NCBI GenBank assembly: GCA_002269645.1
Contig: NIVC01001001.1
Span: forward strand, 124,001-188,000
Origin: Macrostomum lignano
Lineage: Eukaryota
Length of the DNA: 64,000 nt
Direction of reading: 5' to 3'
Shown here: positions 41,801 to 48,147 of the stretch, piece after piece
Position numbering within the stretch: the stretch's first letter is position 1
Layout of the letters: each line of letters opens with the position of its first letter
The notes under the pieces: model-generated
Told to the model about the DNA's origin: nothing
What the model saw: the letters and a program-made list of their open reading frames with translations, nothing else
Databases searched by the model: none
Position numbers and translations under genes: made by a program

Positions 41801-44800
41801 ACAGCCAATGACAGTCAGACTGTAAACTTTATATAATCGAGACAACTTTTTCCATCTCAGTCGATCAATCAATCAGCAGTAGAAGCAGTTCTACTAGAAG
41901 AAGATCGAGGAAGCCAGCTACACGGAGGTAAGTCTTACTTCCATCTTAAGCCTATTATGGCGCTTTCTAGTCCAACGTGTCTCATTATTAGTACCCGTTG
42001 TACTAAAGAGTGGTCCATAACAAAGTTTATTAATCGACTGCTTTATTATTTTTATATTTATTACATATAAATAAGGCGCTTTATCAGAACTGCTTCAACT
42101 TTCCTTACATTGTACACGCACTGATTTTATTAGGTAAGAGTTGGAATAGTCGCCTTAATTCGACGTTTTCAAGTTCCTAAATAATCAGTATTAGTGATAC
42201 AGTCAGTTTGGCTAACCATGGTTGCACAAACAAGAGATTTTGAAGCTTGGTGTACATGGGAAGCCTACTGTCTGGTCACTATGAGCAGCACAGTTAATCC
42301 TAATCCCTATACTAAGCGGACACTACTATCGCAGGGTCCTTCTCTGAGTACACGTGAAGGCAAAAGTCCATGTGTACAGAGTAAGCGCCCTACGTTTTTA
42401 TCCGTTAAGCACCTAGTAACCCCTCATCAAATGCTGGAATAACATTGTGGCGCTTTATAGTCCAACGTGTCAGCTATCAGTGACCGTTTGACTGCGAAGC
42501 GGTCACAATGTCATTCCTTAATCGACTGGATCAGTTTGTAAATATTGCAATAGAAATTATAACTCTGTGGCGCTTTATAGTCCAACGGGTCAGATATTAG
42601 AGTCAGGTTAATGACTCGCCGCGACCGTTGTACTACAAAGTGGTCACAGAGTGGTTTCTAAATCAACTGCCCTACCTACCCAACTGACCTGTCCACCCGA
42701 GTTTAAACGAGTCAAATATGGCGCTTTATAGTCCAACGTGTCTGCTATATGATAAAAGTGACCGTTGTACTATAGAGTGGGCTATATTGCAGGCTTGTTG
42801 ATCAGCGATCAGGACCTTAACCCTTATGTTCAGTACACTGCGAATCCTCCATACCGCTCAACATCCAAACTGCTACTTGTCATCTATACCATCTATACAT
42901 ACTATATATAGGTCATTATTTATGATCTATATCATCATCGTCATCAATACCAGCAATCATTTATTCCAGCCATCATTTATAACATTTATGCAAGTAATCC
43001 ATTATCCATACTGCTCATTATCCAAAGTGCTGCTAGTCAATATCCATACTGCTCATTATCAAAAATACTGCTAGTAATTATCCATACTGCTCATCATCCA
43101 TACTGCTCATTATCCAAAGTACTGCTAGTCATCATCCATACTGCTCATTATCCAAAGTACTGCTAGTCATTATCCATACTGCTCATTATCAAAAATACTG
43201 CTAGTCATTATCCATACTGCTCATTATCCATGCTGGTCATTATCCCAAGTACTGCTAGTCATTATCCATACTGCTTATTATCCATGCTGGTCATTATCCC
43301 AAGTACTGCTAGTCATTATCCATACTGCTTATTATCCAAAGTACTGCTAGTCATTATCCATACTGCTTATTATCCAAAGTACTGCTAGTCATTATCCAAA
43401 GTACTGCTAGTCATTATCCAAAGTACTGCTAGTCATTATCCATACTGCTCATTATCCAAAGTACTGCTAGTCATTATCCATACTGCTCATTATCCATGCT
43501 GGTCATTATCCCAAGTACTGCTAGTCATTATCCATACTGCTAGTCATCATCCATACTGCTCACTATCCATACTGCTCACTATCCATACTGCTCACTATCC
43601 ATACTGCTCATTATCCAAAGTACTGCTAGTCATCATCCATACTGCTTATTATCCAAAGTACTGCTAGTCATTATTCATACTGCTAGTCATCATCTATAAC
43701 CATGCTGGTCATTATTTATACTGCTTAGATCCAACAGAATCCTCAGACTACCCAAAAATTTACCGTAATCCTACTAATGATTTGCGAAGTAAAACGAACA
43801 GTCTCGCGTTGTTTGTGCGAAAATTTCAAATTCATCGAATAATATCGACGAAAATAATCGTGACACCGCTCTAGAAAAACGGAAACAAAGTACATTAACT
43901 TCTACTAATGAAAGTAGTATAAAAAGCGTTTAACAATAACAAGGGAGGTTGCACGGGCTCAGATGCTTACAACAAGGGTGTGCCTAGCGCTGGCTATGTA
44001 GCTATTTAAGGTGGTCACTCGCTCCTCTTCTAAGAATTTCCTTCGCATGTTTTTGTACACAACAGTGCGCAAATAGAAATTGTTAGCTTCTGTAAGTGAA
44101 ATTGAGATTTTCATTAATTTTTAATATAAATTTAGATAGTAGTTTATTGTAAAAAACCACAGGGTCTCTCATTGACATAGATACACATTTTCTAGAAATT
44201 ATAATTTATGGACTGACATTATGGACTGCCATATAAACTAACATATGGATGGAAGTCATAGGATGGAAGTGAACTAGAAAAGCCACCCAGGCGTCTTAGT
44301 GATTTAGTAAAACAGCTTTCTACTTTCAGTTCAGTAGCAAAGAAGAACATGCCTTCTATTTTTCATTATTTATATAAAATAAAGGCAGCTGCAGTGACTT
44401 TGATAAGTTTGCAGCTTGCTAATTGGTTCAGCAATAATGTACATTGGCCAGTCCACTGAAATGTACATAGCAGCTGTAGGCTGGAATTCCGATAATAAAA
44501 ATTAGGGCCGGGCTGGGGGGGTAAGGGCCAATAAATGATGGCTTTTAAATAAGCTACTACTAATAATTATCTAGTTATTCTAGTATCTGTGGTTTCTACT
44601 GAGAGAGGGGCATCTTTCTTTGTGTGGATGTCTATGGTCGAATTGTCAACTTGTCTATGGGCAAGAATGTCTTTGACTATGTCATAGAACTTAGAAGAAA
44701 TCGAAATAGAGAACAGCAGTCTTCTATGGTCTAAAGCCAAAGCTATCTACCAAGCAGCATTATTTCATCTCACACTGAAAGTGGCCACGCGTGTATTCAA

Positions 44801-47800
44801 TAACGAATGTAGCTTCCGTTCTCTGGCCAAAGCTGAATGAGATTGTTTCAATGATTTGAAGAAATTGTACTGAAAATATCGCTTAGATGAGCCTGTAATG
44901 TGTCAATTTTTCGTAACATAATAAATAGCTATTTAATTTACAATTTACTAGGAGTCAATACGTTTCTTAAAAAAACGTACAGAAGTCCTGAATAGAACAC
45001 TGCAGGGTTTTTTTAAATTTGGGAGATTTCCTCGACACTACTTATAGTAAAATGTTATAGCATTTCCAAACTGCCATTTCCAAGAAAAGTATAATTAGTA
45101 GTTAAATTAAGAGTTGACTTGCGTACGGAATAAGTGTTGATAAGCTTATTGGATTTCAATCGATTAGCTTCCAGCGAATAGGACTTCCTTAGCGTGTCTC
45201 TATAGTAAGTGCCGGTGTACTTTTGAATGGCGACTGTAAGCAAAAGTGCATAACAATGTATAAATATTTTGTTAAAGTACTTTAGACGCCCACGATTATT
45301 AAAATACTGAAGAGGATGCTGCAGGTCTAAATAAATCCCTTAGATTAATCTCAACTCCCCATTGATAATAAAAGATAAAATTTTTAATTACAAATATTCT
45401 CTGCATATTTGAGCTGAGATTTTTGTTTAACTGCGTTGTACGAAATTTGCACTTCAAATTGTGATCAAAATGATAGCGCATGTACTTCAGTGCCGGCTCT
45501 AAAAAGGTGTATAAATTAAAAAAAATTACACACTGTCTAATGATCAAATGATTAGAATTTCTTGAACAAAGACAGTTGCAGAGATTTGTAATATTGAATG
45601 AATTTAATTACAAAAATTTGATGCATTTTCATCCTGGCCAAGGTTTGCTTGTTGCGAAATTTCAAATCCCTATAGTAGACAGTCAGGTATTTGAAACCAG
45701 CTTCTAAAATAAAATAAATTATCATAAATCTAGATTTAATATCCTACTGAACTGTGTAGTTTAGTCAATCAAATTACAGTCTGCTCAAGGACGGAGCGTG
45801 GTGCTTTAATGAACGATTTCTACAATTCACTAGGTCGCCACACACAGCCTCAATTACCCCAGCTAATGCTGGCACCCATTTTACAGCTGGGTGAACTGAA
45901 GCAATGCAGACTTAAGTGTCTTGCTCAAGGACACAAATTGTTCCGAGCGGGTCGAGATTGTAGGTCAAGTGTGACGCTTTAACCACTAGGCTACAACCGC
46001 CCTTGATTACTTACCAACGACTGTCTTAGCTGCCTCATCACCGAGGCCCCAGCATCAATAGTCTTCTGCCGATATTTCAAATAAGTACTGTAGTAGTTTC
46101 TCAAATATTTCGATGCTAAGTCTATAAAGCATTGTTTTCATTATGTTAGAATCAATTATCTTAGAACACAGCTCAACACAACAGCTCAATTGCCAAAGAT
46201 TTTAGCAGCAACAAGTAGAAACAATGATTAACTTACAAAAACAGAGTAGAATCGGTTTTTAGCCCTGCTTCGATTGTAATCCGATTTTAAGAAACCGTAA
46301 TACCAACTATTCAGGTATTTGATACCTAGGCCTGATCGATTATTAATAGACTGTGTACATTATATAAGAATAAGGATTTTTTAAAAAATGGGAAAAGCCA
46401 TTTCAGGGCCAAATATTCTCTAGTTTATTGACCACAAGCAAGAATTTCTCAAGTATTACGCTTGTAAAGTTTAATTAGTTAATTAATGCATAGTTGCGAC
46501 AATAACGTGAGCAATTTTGACCATTCAATCCTGGTCATGTTTAACAGTCCCAGCACAAACACTACACTATATAGTCTGAAACAAATAAAAAACTTTCTAA
46601 CTTTCCCAAACTCTGTCTCAATGAGAGAGCCCTGCAACGTCCTTTCACAATTGAGGCGCAAAAACTTTAAATAATAATAATCGGAATTTTATGTTAAATA
46701 TGCTACTGGTTTGCTTCATAAGTAGAATTAAACGAATATTGCAACAATATTTAAAAAGGAGCAGAACTTACTGGTCCAAGCGGCAATGTTAGTGGGCTTG
46801 TAGCTGGTGATTTGCAAAGCTTTGTCAATTACTTTCTTGGCGGCCTCCATGTTAACGGGGGCGGAGTAGGGCAGGGAGAAGTCGAATACGTTTGAACCGG
46901 TTTCGTCTTTGAGCTGGCGGTAGGCTTTACGGAGTATGCCCTGGGATTAGTAGGATATTGGAATGGTAGGATTGTTTGATTTTTAGATGCTTATTATGCT
47001 TTTGGACGAATACGAACGTACTTTACATCGAGGTGTGAAAGTTACAAAGTGTGACAGGCCCATAGCAACCGAGGATCTGTGAGTGTGACAGGTCCATAGC
47101 AACCGAGGATCTGTGAGTGTGACAGGCCCATAGCAACCGAAGATGGGTGTGACAGGCCCATAGCAACCGAGGATCTGTGAGTGTGATAGGCCCATAGCAA
47201 CCGAGGATCTGTGAGTGTGACAGGCCCATAGCAACCGAGGATCTGTGAGTGTGACAGGCTCATAGCAACCGAGGATCTGTGAGTGTGACAGACCCATAGC
47301 AACCGAGGATCTGTGAGTGTGACAGACCCATAGCAACCGAGGATCTGTGAGTGTGACAGACCCATAGCAACCGAGGATCTGTGAGTGTGACAGACCCATA
47401 GCAACGGAGGATCTGTGAGTGTGACAGGCCCATAGCAACGGAGGATCTGTGAGTGTGACAGGCCCATAGCAACGGAGGATCTGTGAGTGTGACAGGCCCA
47501 TAGCAACCGAGGATCTGTGAGTGTGACAGGCCCATAGCAACCGCCAGATAGCCCCCTACCTTCCACTCAGCGGACAGTTCGCCAGTATCGCTAAGGTCTC
47601 CACCGCTAGTTCTGGCAATCTTTGCCGGGCTACCAGCCGACGCACCGAAGGCGGCGCCGCTGCCGCCCGGAGCGCCGACAATGTCAAAACTGCCGAACAT
47701 GCTGCCGCTAGCGTCGTCGTCCAGAATCTGACAATCGTCATCAGAGTTGTACTCTCGTTTTAATGAGCCAGCCGACATAAAGTCGGCGACAGCGCCGCTG

Positions 47801-48147
47801 CTTGACGGCTGCTGCTGCATCTTCATAGCCGAGTTGCCGATTTGCGATCCAGATGATCCAATATTCGCCGTCGGCGGAGGCGGAGGCGGCGGACATCTGG
47901 CGTGAGCATCGGCCGTGTCGGCAATCCTGACAAATTGCGGTTCCATAGCTTCGACTAGATGAGAATTCAATTGGGTGACGATTTTGAAAGCGACCATCAG
48001 ATCTCTAGCAGCCATGCTGTCAATCAGCATAGTGGCATTAGTGATGGTGCACTCGAACAGTGTCAAAGGCGAGAATGCGCCTCCGCCGCCGGCGCCACCG
48101 CCGGCACCCATCTGCTGCGGGGTCATCATAGCAATGCTGGCCGCCAT
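32870..48147 (-). CDS. Gene Y: 4-exon, ~397-aa paralogue of gene X
   Basis: Exons 48147-47560 (phase 0), 46940-46772 (GILRKAYRQLKDETGSNVFDFSLPYSAPVNMEAAKKVI), 46121-46015 (107 nt, same as X exon 3), 33199-32870 (KLNRRQKA..DFTSSDEE..VKQLPWESDE..LDQ..SSRPPPSECPGWA). Phases 0/1/0 as in X. The 12.8-kb intron 3 link is inferred from homology to X. Confidence 0.8.
33252..33497. repeat. 33-bp minisatellite TCATCCTGAAGTGACCCTGAAGCTTATTAATAC
   Basis: Visible. Confidence 0.92.
33710..34560. repeat. 32/36-bp minisatellite GAAAGCAACTCAGAGATGGGAGACAGAAGACT
   Basis: Visible. Confidence 0.95.
35080..38515. repeat. 21-bp-based satellite GACAGACTGAGACACATGAAT with higher-order blocks
   Basis: Visible; source of the >1000-aa CLSLSF/VSQSVI ORFs. 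Confidence 0.97.
38995..39720. repeat. CT-rich low-complexity tract with a triplicated internal block
   Basis: Visible. Confidence 0.85.
40430..41460. repeat. GA-rich repeat GAGGATGGAGACTGGGA and related low-complexity sequence
   Basis: Visible. Confidence 0.85.
41652..41862 (+). promoter_or_regulatory. Putative Pol II promoter: four CCAAT boxes (~49-bp repeat), TATA box, Inr
   Basis: CAGCCAAT at about 41656, 41705, 41754 and 41802; TATATAA at 41831-37; TCAGTC Inr with A at 41859, 28 bp after the TATA. Confidence 0.7.
41859..41927 (+). ncRNA. Putative non-coding first exon of a pri-miRNA host transcript
   Basis: No ATG; ends in a consensus donor GAG|GTAAGT at 41928, about 20 bp before the first hairpin. 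Confidence 0.55.
41948..42028 (+). ncRNA. pre-miRNA-like hairpin A1 (5p UGGCGCUUUCUAGUCCAACGUG at 41958)
   Basis: Hand-folded long stem; apical UGU; CGAC at 42035 (+16 from the predicted 3p end). Confidence 0.75.
42200..42274 (+). ncRNA. pre-miRNA-like hairpin B (different arm sequences)
   Basis: CAG-CAGT-GGCT-CCATG-TGCAC-CAAG pairs with CTTG-GTGTA-CATGG-AGCC-ACTG-CTG. Confidence 0.55.
42330..42394 (+). ncRNA. pre-miRNA-like hairpin C
   Basis: CGCAGGGT-CTT-CTCT-GTACACGTG pairs with CATGTGTAC-AGAG-AAG-GCCCTACG. Confidence 0.5.
42436..42517 (+). ncRNA. pre-miRNA-like hairpin A2 (5p UGGCGCUUUAUAGUCCAACGUG at 42448)
   Basis: Lower stem GGAATAACATTG / CAATGTCATTCC; upper stem about 20 bp; UGU; CGAC at 42523 (+16). 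Confidence 0.8.
42551..42660 (+). ncRNA. pre-miRNA-like hairpin A3 (5p UGGCGCUUUAUAGUCCAACGGG at 42568)
   Basis: Lower stem TAGAAATT..ACTCTG / CAGAGT-GGTTTCTA; enlarged loop containing its own GAGTCA/TGACTC stem; CAAC at 42664 (+16). Confidence 0.75.
42706..42799 (+). ncRNA. pre-miRNA-like hairpin A4 (5p UGGCGCUUUAUAGUCCAACGUG at 42719)
   Basis: Lower stem AACGAGTC-AATA / TATT-GGCTTGTT; UGU; CAGC at 42803 (+17). Confidence 0.75.
43000..43700. repeat. Compound repeat TCCATACTGCTCATTA / TCCAAAGTACTGCTAGTCATTA
   Basis: Visible. Confidence 0.92.
45785..46002 (-). mobile_element. tRNA-derived SINE with a CORE/MIR-like central domain
   Basis: Minus strand: GGGCGGTTGTAGCCTAGTGGTTAAAGC (A box), degenerate B box (CTCGACCC), TGTGTCCTTGAGCAAGACACTTAA, CCCAGCTGTAAAATGGG; these blocks recall the MIR core. 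Confidence 0.75.
47045..47542. repeat. 34-bp minisatellite GTGTGACAGGCCCATAGCAACCGAGGATCTGTGA in gene Y intron 1
   Basis: Visible. Confidence 0.95.

What the first reader, a model, noticed from the sequence alone, without database searches (positions are those of the whole stretch)
41948..42806. Cluster of four paralogous pre-miRNA hairpins with an unfamiliar seed (GGCGCUU)
Seen: a 22-nt block UGGCGCUUU(A/C)UAGUCCAACG(U/G)G recurs at 41958, 42448, 42568 and 42719, while loops and flanks have diverged. In each copy it is the 5' arm of a ~33-35-bp imperfect stem. The lower stems differ in sequence yet stay paired (ACATTGTG/CACAATGT, ACTCTGTG/CACAGAGT, TTATGG/CCATAA, AATATGG/CTATATT), which is covariation. 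With a 2-nt 3' overhang, a CNNC motif falls at +16, +16, +16 and +17, and UGU follows the 5p arm in three copies. Established: CNNC about 16-18 nt downstream and apical UGU are Microprocessor (Drosha/SRSF3) determinants in bilaterians. Inference: this is a lineage-specific, tandemly expanded miRNA family with the 5p arm mature. I do not recognise the seed among deeply conserved families; from memory, unverified, miR-2722 begins similarly (UGGCGCC) but has a different seed. No ORF or tandem repeat explains this block.
Basis: partly seen in the sequence, partly recalled or inferred. Interest (0 to 1): 0.88.

Follow-up and report, generated by a model that had tools for sequence, protein, structure and literature searches.

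The report
Macrostomum miR-2160 family microRNA cluster
The four repeated hairpins look like a real microRNA gene cluster in the flatworm Macrostomum lignano, but their "unfamiliar" seed GGCGCUU is that of miR-2160, a known flatworm family, so they are new members of a known family rather than a new family.

Summary
The 22-nt block occurs exactly four times, on the + strand (41958, 42448, 42568, 42719). Each copy is the 5' arm of a stable hairpin. Among the copies the 5p arm is 95% identical and the 3p arm 72%. Flanks and basal stems are at shuffled-sequence level, yet the basal stems stay paired through compensatory changes. A CNNC lies 16-17 nt after every inferred 3p end.

The window is Macrostomum lignano. 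The seed is not new: UGGCGCUU starts the 5p arm of the flatworm family MIR-2160 (sme-miR-2160, sma-miR-8437, Fhe-Mir-2160-P1, and two Echinococcus clusters with six copies in 5' arms).

A paralogous M. lignano locus (L001/L002) carries a homologous gene. It has CCAAT boxes, a TATA-like box, a ~70-nt first exon, a GTAAGT donor, then a GGCGCUU-seed hairpin, again with CNNC at +16.

The cluster is not a dispersed repeat in the roughly 150 kb I could search.

Verdict: a polycistronic miRNA gene of the MIR-2160 family, 5p arm mature, + strand. Expression was not testable here. It is a new member of a known kind and of moderate interest. It places the family in Macrostomorpha, and the cluster also holds a second conserved hairpin type with no known relative.

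The parts
41646..41809 (+). Putative promoter: a 49-nt tandem repeat (3.3 copies) carrying four CCAAT boxes. The last one (CAGCCAATGAC, about 41798-41806) lies about 60 nt before the predicted start site.
   Evidence: Tandem repeat and repeat family D7; sequence. The paralogous locus L001 also has three CCAAT boxes upstream. Function is inferred.
41830..41836 (+). TATATAA box, 29 nt upstream of an initiator-like TCAGTC (A at 41859).
   Evidence: Sequence read. L001 has ATAAAAA at the equivalent place. Inferred, not shown.
41859..41928 (+). Predicted non-coding first exon (about 70 nt, no ATG), ending at the consensus donor GGAG|GTAAGT (GT at 41929).
   Evidence: Sequence. L001 has a first exon of similar length and a GTG|GTAAGT donor at 13077-13072(-). 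Splicing itself is not shown.
41947..42029 (+). Hairpin 1. 5p is UGGCGCUUUCUAGUCCAACGUG at 41958-41979. The inferred 3p is 41996-42019. CNNC (CGAC) is at 42035-42038.
   Evidence: 73.6 bits.
42072..42158 (+). Decayed fifth copy: AGGCGCUUUAUCAG starts at 42074 and is closed by CGCCUU, followed by AAUUCGAC. The fold is weak, so it is probably not processed.
   Evidence: Repeat D10; fold of -20.1 kcal/mol with z -2.2; GGCGCTT at 42075; model score of 9 bits.
42112..42281 (+). Two further stable hairpins (42105-42205 and 42185-42285) unrelated in sequence to the family. They are possible additional precursors.
   Evidence: -29.2 kcal/mol (z -5.3) and -36.9 kcal/mol (z -4.05). No conservation evidence.
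42326..42398 (+). Hairpin of a second conserved type ('B'). Its 3' arm CAUGUGUACAGAGUAAGCGCCCUA is conserved in two hairpins of the paralogous locus.
   Evidence: -28.8 kcal/mol, z -3.95; BLAST block; alignment A5; L001 folds.
42436..42517 (+). Hairpin 2. 5p is UGGCGCUUUAUAGUCCAACGUG at 42448-42469 and 3p is 42486-42507. It has an 11-bp basal stem. CNNC (CGAC) is at 42523-42526.
   Evidence: 84.1 bits.
42551..42660 (+). Hairpin 3. 5p is UGGCGCUUUAUAGUCCAACGGG at 42568-42589 and 3p is 42626-42648. The apical region is 36 nt with its own small stem. CNNC (CAAC) is at 42664-42667.
   Evidence: 85.3 bits.
42706..42799 (+). Hairpin 4. 5p is UGGCGCUUUAUAGUCCAACGUG at 42719-42740 and 3p is 42764-42786. 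CNNC (CAGC) is at 42803-42806.
   Evidence: 88 bits.
43962..48147 (-). Neighbouring convergent protein-coding gene (UniProt A0A1I8FQ20 of M. lignano). Exons are 48147-47560, 46943-46743 and 44093-43962. It is not part of the miRNA gene. It anchors the synteny and identifies the species.

Best explanation
This is a polycistronic microRNA gene of the flatworm family MIR-2160 in Macrostomum lignano.

RNA polymerase II probably starts near 41859, downstream of a CCAAT/TATA promoter. A short non-coding first exon ends at a GTAAGT donor. The hairpins follow within about 900 nt.

Each of the four intact hairpins has roughly 11 bp of basal stem, roughly 22-25 bp of upper stem, and a CNNC 16-17 nt after the 3p end. 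That is the substrate form of Drosha/DGCR8. Dicer would then release a duplex whose 5p strand, UGGCGCUUUAUAGUCCAACGUG, is loaded into Argonaute. All copies share the seed GGCGCUU, so the cluster raises the dose of one targeting specificity: mRNAs with AAGCGCC sites.

Shown here:
- the repeats and their folds;
- the conservation profile and the compensatory pairing;
- strand asymmetry;
- seed identity to published MIR-2160 members;
- a homologous gene at a paralogous locus.

Inferred, not shown: transcription, the exact cleavage sites, arm choice, the targets and the biological role. In planarians miR-2160 is enriched in neoblasts.
For: - The four copies are exact or near-exact and none is expected by chance.
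- The hairpins are stable, with z-scores from -3.8 to -6.7.
- The identity profile among copies is 5p 0.95, 3p 0.72, apical 0.52 and +10..+22 0.67. The 5' flank, both basal-stem halves and the distal 3' flank equal the shuffled null of 0.41-0.51. The copies are therefore old and only the miRNA-relevant parts are held.
- 94% of cells are paired. Four basal-stem pairs have compensatory changes, and no shuffle out of 500 reaches the covariation score.
- CNNC lies at +16/+17 in all four hairpins and at +16, in a different sequence (CACC), in the paralogous hairpin. The chance per hairpin is about 0.097.
- The + strand is favoured. It has lower energy in all four hairpins. Ten G:U cells would become A.C mismatches on the other strand.
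- All six GGCGCTT in the 64 kb lie within 41959-42726, against 2.2 expected across the whole window.
- Seed and 5' nucleotide match published MIR-2160 members:
  - sma-miR-n3/8437, UGGCGCUUAGUAGAAUGUCACCG;
  - Fhe-Mir-2160-P1, and -P2 (AGGCGCUUU...), which shares the seed but starts with A;
  - egr-new-7, UGGCGCUUUCUAACUUUACUGA, annotated 5P. Its first 12 nt equal those of hp1.
- Echinococcus has clusters of 4 and 2 such hairpins with the seed in the 5' arm.
- The species is M. lignano, a platyhelminth. Drosha, DGCR8, Dicer and Exportin-5 have been reported in it (PMC4604429).
- The paralogous locus L001/L002 has the same gene architecture and a GGCGCUU-seed hairpin.
Against: - No small-RNA reads could be examined, so expression, 5' end precision and arm choice are unproven.
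- Similarity to published members beyond the seed is weak. Shuffle p-values are 0.02-0.3 and uncorrected.
- Hairpin 1 is the least stable, at -22.4 kcal/mol.
- No Rfam family matches, so there is no model-based confirmation of family membership.
- The 22-mer is absent from the supplementary tables of the one M. lignano small-RNA paper held. Those tables list only sequences identical to miRBase entries.
Confidence: 0.82

Rival explanations
1. A genuine miRNA cluster, but of an independent Macrostomum-specific family whose seed converged on GGCGCUU. Under this reading it is not homologous to MIR-2160.
For: Similarity beyond nucleotide 8-12 to the fluke, schistosome and tapeworm members is not significant after multiple testing. 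No synteny with other flatworms could be tested.
Against: - An identical 8-mer at the very 5' end of the same arm, within the same phylum, and in the same multi-copy cluster organisation.
- hp1 shares its first 12 nt with egr-new-7.
- The L001 copy and Fhe-Mir-2160-P2 share UGUCCA at the same positions.
- Published members are just as divergent from each other outside the seed.
Confidence: 0.07
2. Copies of a small foldback or MITE-like transposon, or a local palindromic satellite, possibly feeding siRNA or piRNA pathways rather than the miRNA pathway.
For: M. lignano is repeat-rich and the window is full of tandem repeats. The arms are near-palindromic, and the only weak Rfam similarity is to plant MIR814, at 18-25 bits against a threshold of 90.
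Against: - The covariance model finds only the four copies in 64 kb, and nothing convincing in 86 kb of paralogous loci.
- BLAST of the cluster against the rest of the window and the loci finds no repeat.
- Divergence is not uniform: the 5p arm is at 95% identity while the flanks are at the random level.
- All copies are on one strand within 860 nt.
- Stems of about 33 bp are pre-miRNA sized, not hpRNA sized.
Confidence: 0.04
3. The functional strand is the minus strand. The hairpins would be structures in the 3' region of the convergent protein-coding gene that ends at 43962.
For: The minus strand also folds, at -19 to -41.5 kcal/mol. The gene's stop codon is only about 1.15 kb away.
Against: - The + strand folds are more stable in all four hairpins, strongly so for hp4 (-38.3 against -19.0).
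- There are ten G:U cells on the + strand.
- The conserved seed sits at the 5' end of the 5' arm only on the + strand.
- A CCAAT/TATA promoter and a donor site lie upstream on the + strand, and they are conserved at the paralogous locus.
Confidence: 0.03
4. A decaying, no longer expressed relic of a MIR-2160 cluster.
For: One clearly decayed copy exists at 42075. hp1 is weakly folded. No expression data are available.
Against: Four copies keep a near-invariant 5p arm and paired stems although their flanks are saturated with change. That pattern requires continued purifying selection.
Confidence: 0.04

Closest known systems
MIR-2160 family (sme-miR-2160 of Schmidtea mediterranea; sma-miR-8437 / sma-miR-n3; Fhe-Mir-2160-P1 and -P2; Opisthorchiid Mir-2160-P1/P2)
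   Same: - The seed GGCGCUU at positions 2-8, usually after a 5' U.
- The mature strand is on the 5' arm.
- The phylum is Platyhelminthes.
- There are several paralogues per genome.

   Different: - The 3' half of the mature sequence differs: UAUAGUCCAACGUG here.
- The host lineage is Macrostomorpha, outside the planarian and neodermatan species for which I found the family reported.
- Expression is unverified here.
[quoted passage not shown]
   Same: They are tandem clusters of four and two homologous hairpins, each starting UGG(C/A)GCUU in the 5' arm. The authors read this as dosage copies of one seed. egr-new-7 shares its first 12 nt with hp1.
   Different: - The Echinococcus precursors are shorter (53-63 nt).
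- The two tapeworm clusters lie on opposite strands about 8 kb apart, whereas all four copies here are on one strand within 860 nt.
- The tapeworm paralogues differ much more from each other in the mature 3' half than the M. lignano copies do.
Seed-sharing polycistronic miRNA clusters in other animals (for example C. elegans mir-35-41, zebrafish miR-430, the protostome mir-71/mir-2 cluster); from my own knowledge, not tested here
   Same: Several hairpins with one seed are made from one primary transcript, which raises the dose of a single targeting specificity.
   Different: The seeds and families are unrelated. This is a comparison of organisation only.

Membership tests
MIR-2160 | Mature strand has the seed GGCGCUU at positions 2-8 (usually UGGCGCUU at the 5' end) | tested here: met
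   All four blocks begin UGGCGCUU. This is identical to sma-miR-n3/8437, Fhe-Mir-2160-P1 and egr-new-7/12/22/24/61. The position as a true 5' end is inferred from hairpin geometry, not from reads.
MIR-2160 | The seed-bearing strand is the 5' arm of a pre-miRNA-type hairpin | tested here: met
   The folds place the block in the 5' arm of stems of about 33 bp. Echinococcus members are annotated 5P.
MIR-2160 | Sequence homology beyond the seed to named members | tested here: inconclusive
   hp1 and egr-new-7 are identical over nt 1-12. A GUCCA block is shared with Fhe-Mir-2160-P2. Shuffle p-values for nt 9 to the end are 0.015-0.3 and uncorrected. Named members are equally divergent from one another.
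MIR-2160 | Occurs in Platyhelminthes | tested here: met
   The window encodes M. lignano protein A0A1I8FQ20, apart from a frameshifted stretch in the database entry. The lineage is given.
MIR-2160 | Multi-copy, often clustered paralogues | tested here: met
   There are four intact copies and one decayed copy within 860 nt, plus one copy at the paralogous locus. Compare.
MIR-2160 | Orthology by conserved genomic neighbourhood with other flatworms | not testable with these tools
   No other flatworm genome could be reached. Only M. lignano loci were retrievable, through proteins.
Canonical animal miRNA (Drosha/Dicer product) | Hairpin with about 11 bp of basal stem plus about 22 bp of upper stem and single-stranded flanks | tested here: met
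   hp2 has 11 paired bases below the inferred cut. hp1 has 8, hp3 has 14 and hp4 has 18. The upper stems are 22-25 nt and the apical regions 16-36 nt.
Canonical animal miRNA (Drosha/Dicer product) | Conservation profile: mature arm > star arm > loop and flanks, with structure kept by compensatory change | tested here: met
   Identities are 0.95, 0.72, 0.52 and about 0.5. Four compensatory pairs.
Canonical animal miRNA (Drosha/Dicer product) | Downstream CNNC at about +16 to +18 | tested here: met
   +16, +16, +16 and +17 in the window, and +16 at L001. Whether flatworm Microprocessor uses the motif is not known to me.
Canonical animal miRNA (Drosha/Dicer product) | 21-23-nt reads with a homogeneous 5' end from both arms and 2-nt 3' overhangs | not testable with these tools
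MITE / foldback transposon | Dispersed copies with uniform divergence, terminal inverted repeats and target-site duplications | tested here: not met
   There are no copies outside the cluster in 63 kb of window plus 86 kb of other M. lignano loci. Divergence is strongly non-uniform. The sample is small relative to the genome.
Any Rfam 15 family | Score at or above the family's gathering threshold | tested here: not met
   There are no hits at gathering thresholds. The best sub-threshold hit is plant MIR814, at 18-25 bits against 90.

The most novel reading that the evidence does not exclude
This is the first evidence that MIR-2160 exists in Macrostomorpha, the earliest-branching rhabditophoran lineage. 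That would make the family, and its habit of forming seed-sharing clusters, at least as old as Rhabditophora. The same primary transcript also carries a second, undescribed conserved hairpin family (3' arm GUGUACAGAGUAAGC). It may have arisen from a MIR-2160 hairpin by divergence and arm switching.
Probability: 0.4. Interest if true: 0.4.

Novelty: new member of a known kind. Interest (0 to 1): 0.3.

Why it matters
- Macrostomum lignano is a laboratory model for stem cells and regeneration. I found no published catalogue of its lineage-specific miRNAs; the one small-RNA study held reports only miRBase-identical sequences.
- miR-2160 is neoblast-enriched in planarians, and the related Echinococcus clusters are expressed mainly in adult worms. 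A defined four-copy locus with a compact, apparently conserved promoter gives a concrete handle for reporter, knock-down and target studies.
- It dates the family to at least the common ancestor of Macrostomorpha and the other rhabditophorans.
- CNNC lies at +16/+17 in five hairpins whose flanks are otherwise randomised. This is indirect evidence that the determinant is used in flatworms.

Tried and rejected
- **Rfam.** The gathering-threshold and E-value scans gave no family. The weak plant MIR814 hits come from palindromic similarity.
- **Literature, whole block.** Searches for the 16-mer and the 13-mer found nothing. UGGCGCUUUA occurs only inside mosquito miR-79-5p. There it is not at the 5' end, and the 3p arm is unlike miR-9/79, so I rejected it.
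- **Literature, first eight letters.** Searching these is what led to MIR-2160.
- **Pattern search in the paralogous loci.** The 22-mer with up to 3 mismatches, and model R1, missed the paralogous hairpin because its 3' half has diverged. A plain GGCGCTT search found it. The GGCGCTT sites in L003/L004 are GC-rich coding sequence, not hairpins.
- **An inverted family member.** I considered that the hairpin at 42326-42398 is an inverted member, because its 3' arm contains AAGCGCC. I rejected this because the two homologous hairpins at L001 have AAGCAUCC and AAACGUCC there.
- **Weak model hits.** The hits at 18981 and 15100 are unrelated near-perfect palindromes.
- **Metagenome scan.** The 19-mer gave four hits, all in GC-rich bacterial coding DNA with no hairpin, so they are chance matches.
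- **Reaching another copy of this exact locus.** P0001 and P0004 are not on record. Two protein searches entered as letters returned nothing.
- **Supplements.** The supplementary tables of the M. lignano small-RNA paper do not contain the sequence.
- **miR-2722.**
Full report
**Observation.** The 22-nt block TGGCGCTTTMTAGTCCAACGKG occurs exactly four times, at 41958, 42448, 42568 and 42719, all on the + strand. None was found in 100 dinucleotide-preserving shuffles. Each copy sits in the 5' arm of a single hairpin. Energies are -22.4, -41.9, -46.7 and -38.3 kcal/mol, with z-scores of -3.8, -6.6, -6.7 and -5.2. I placed the 3p end by a 2-nt overhang opposite the first base of the block. On that basis a CNNC starts at +16, +16, +16 and +17. 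Hairpin 2 has 11 paired bases below the inferred Drosha cut. The apical regions are 16, 16, 36 and 23 nt. UGU spans the end of the 5p arm in three copies.

**More than chance, and under selection.** I split each copy into regions and compared all pairs.

| Region | Mean identity | Shuffled null |
|---|---|---|
| 5p arm | 0.95 | 0.51 |
| 3p arm | 0.72 | 0.50 |
| +10..+22 (holds the CNNC) | 0.67 | 0.48 |
| apical region | 0.52 | 0.43 |
| 5' flank, both basal-stem halves, distal 3' flank | 0.41-0.51 | 0.41-0.51 |

The duplications are therefore old enough for neutral sequence to be randomised. The 5p arm has nevertheless changed at no more than 2 of 22 positions. The basal stems are randomised in sequence but still pair. 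Over 26 pairs, 94.2% of cells are standard pairs and four pairs have changes on both sides. No shuffle out of 500 reaches the observed covariation score, and sliding the partners drops pairing to 31-60%. This is the classical conservation profile of a miRNA precursor.

**Copy number.** A covariance model built from the four copies and run without filters finds only those four in the 64-kb window, at 73.6-88 bits. The next hits (21 and 16 bits) are unrelated near-perfect palindromes. All six occurrences of GGCGCTT in the window lie between 41959 and 42726, against 2.2 expected for the whole window. BLAST of the cluster against the rest of the window and 86 kb of other loci gives no repeat. Within this limited sample it is not a dispersed element.

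**Strand.** The minus strand also folds but is less stable in every copy: -21.0, -39.2, -41.5 and -19.0 kcal/mol. Ten pair cells are G:U on the + strand and would be A.C mismatches on the other strand. Only on the + strand does the conserved block lie at the 5' end of the 5' arm. A plausible promoter lies upstream on the + strand (see below).

**Organism and neighbourhood.** An open reading frame at 47563-48147(-) matches Macrostomum lignano proteins. The best, UniProt A0A1I8FQ20, is identical to the window's three exons (48147-47560, 46943-46743, 44093-43962) except for a stretch that is frameshifted in the database entry. The window is therefore M. lignano or something extremely close to it. 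This gene is convergent with the hairpins and ends about 1.15 kb from hairpin 4. A syntaxin gene lies further on. M. lignano has been reported to have Drosha, DGCR8, Dicer, TRBP and Exportin-5 and an abundant ~22-nt RNA population. Only sequences identical to miRBase entries were listed for it (PMC4604429). The block is not in those tables.

**Identity of the seed.** Rfam has no match, and no paper in the library holds the whole block. Searching for the first eight letters led to the answer.
- sma-miR-n3 of Schistosoma mansoni is UGGCGCUUAGUAGAAUGUCACCG. [quoted passage not shown]
- Fasciola hepatica has Fhe-Mir-2160-P1 (TGGCGCTTAGTTATATGTCATCG) and -P2 (AGGCGCTTTGATTGTCCACACTGA) under MirGeneDB naming (PMC7878377).
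- Opisthorchiids have Mir-2160-P1 and -P2 (10.1101/146654).
- Echinococcus granulosus and E. multilocularis have two nearby clusters: four hairpins on one strand and two on the other. [quoted passage not shown] Their sequences all begin UGG(C/A)GCUU.
- egr-new-7, UGGCGCUUUCUAACUUUACUGA, is annotated 5P with about 37,800 mature reads against 3 star reads. It is identical to hairpin 1 over its first 12 nt.

Beyond the seed, similarity to named members is weak (shuffle p 0.015-0.3, uncorrected). The named members are no more alike among themselves. I therefore file the hairpins as members of MIR-2160 on four grounds: seed, arm, phylum and cluster organisation. Homology of the 3' half is left open.

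**A paralogous copy of the whole gene.** Two near-identical M. lignano contigs (L001, L002) hold a paralogous region: syntaxin, then a paralogue of the neighbouring gene, with about 70% nucleotide identity in coding exons. My first searches missed anything there. A search for GGCGCTT found one site, in the expected place and orientation. Reading that strand shows, in order:
- three CCAAT boxes;
- an ATAAAAA box;
- about 70 nt of non-coding sequence ending in GTG|GTAAGT;
- 59 nt later, a hairpin whose 5' arm is UGGCGCUUCGUAUGUCCAUUUG (-32 kcal/mol, z -4.4), with CNNC (CACC) at +16.

Its tail resembles the window copies (p about 0.005-0.03). Apart from these elements the two loci do not align. 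Gene architecture, seed and CNNC position have thus survived a divergence that erased the surrounding sequence.

**Transcription unit in the window (inferred).** A 49-nt tandem repeat at 41646-41809 carries four CCAAT boxes. TATATAA lies at 41830-41836. An initiator-like TCAGTC has its A at 41859, 29 nt after the TATA box. The ATG-free stretch 41859-41928 ends in GGAG|GTAAGT. Hairpin 1 begins 18 nt after the donor, so the hairpins may be intronic in a non-coding host transcript. None of this is shown by transcript data.

**Other elements in the cluster.**
- A fifth GGCGCTT at 42075 starts a copy that has lost most of its stem (-20.1 kcal/mol, z -2.2). It still carries an AAUUCGAC like the conserved 3' flank, so it is probably a dead paralogue.
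- Between hairpins 1 and 2 lie three more stable hairpins.
- One of these, at 42326-42398, has a 3' arm whose core AUGUGUACAGAGUAAGC recurs identically in one L001 hairpin and with two changes in the other. The invariant block is GTGTACA.AGTAA.C..CC. This second conserved hairpin type has no Rfam or literature match. The AAGCGCC it contains in the window is not kept in the paralogues. I therefore do not read it as an inverted MIR-2160 copy.

**Rivals.**
- Convergent seed in an unrelated family: it cannot be excluded without intermediate taxa, but it is unlikely given phylum, arm, 5' nucleotide and organisation.
- Transposon or satellite: contradicted by the copy-number results and the non-uniform divergence.
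- Minus-strand function: contradicted by energies, wobble pairs and the conserved upstream promoter.
- Dead relic: contradicted by the strong constraint on four copies.

**What is not shown.** No small-RNA or transcript data could be examined. Expression, cleavage sites, arm choice, targets and function are therefore inferred. I could not query miRBase or MirGeneDB directly. No paper in the library that mentions miR-2160 concerns Macrostomum, and none that combines MirGeneDB with Macrostomum reports a Macrostomum miRNA catalogue. A database entry may still exist.

**Verdict.** This is a real feature and very probably a functional polycistronic miRNA gene. It belongs to the known flatworm family MIR-2160, not to a new family. 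Interest is moderate. It extends the family to Macrostomorpha, supplies a candidate stem-cell miRNA locus in a tractable model, and reveals a companion hairpin family of unknown affinity.

Noticed in passing
window 42326-42398 (+); L001 12898-12826 (-) and 12748-12676 (-): A second conserved hairpin type inside the cluster. Its 3' arm holds the invariant block GTGTACA.AGTAA.C..CC across the three hairpins, while the 5' arms vary. There is no Rfam or literature match. It may be an undescribed miRNA with a 3p mature strand, perhaps a distant derivative of the MIR-2160 hairpins.
   Followed up: partly
L001 13300-12940 (-), identical in L002: The paralogous M. lignano locus carries a homologous pri-miRNA gene: CCAAT boxes, ATAAAAA, a first exon of about 70 nt, a GTAAGT donor, and a GGCGCUU-seed hairpin (5p 13018-12997) with CNNC at +16.
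   Followed up: yes
window 42072-42158 (+): A decayed fifth family copy: AGGCGCUUUAUCAG..., closed by CGCCUU and followed by AAUUCGAC. It folds poorly (z -2.2).
   Followed up: yes
window 42105-42205 and 42185-42285 (+): Two further stable hairpins between hairpins 1 and 2 (z -5.3 and -4.05). They have no sequence relation to the family and no conservation evidence.
   Followed up: partly
window 41646-41809: A 49-nt tandem repeat whose unit carries a CCAAT box (AGCCAATAGGAA) lies directly upstream of a TATATAA. This looks like a promoter amplified by tandem duplication.
   Followed up: partly
window 15100-15161 and 18970-19060: Near-perfect palindromic hairpins (-46 and -43 kcal/mol, z about -8 to -9), unrelated to the miRNA family. 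They may be small inverted-repeat elements.
   Followed up: no
window 16862-17254 and 20293-20652 (+): Two tandem fragments of invertebrate-type lysozyme (Pfam Destabilase) genes.
   Followed up: no
window 29522-30556 (-) and 47260-48147 (-): Two paralogous genes of an uncharacterised Macrostomum protein family (shared motif FSPLTLFECT) flank the miRNA cluster. The UniProt entry A0A1I8FQ20 for the second gene contains a frameshifted stretch relative to the window.
   Followed up: partly
whole window: Mini- and microsatellites are extremely dense: long arrays at about 3.8-4.4, 7.1-7.7, 12.6-13.3, 21.1-23.7, 24.9-26.2, 31.5-32.9, 35.0-38.5 and 43.0-43.7 kb. They create long spurious open reading frames.
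   Followed up: no
L005-L008 (metagenome contigs): The 19-mer GGCGCTTTNTAGTCCAACG occurs four times in JGI metagenome contigs. All hits are in GC-rich bacterial coding sequence without a hairpin, so they are chance matches.
   Followed up: yes
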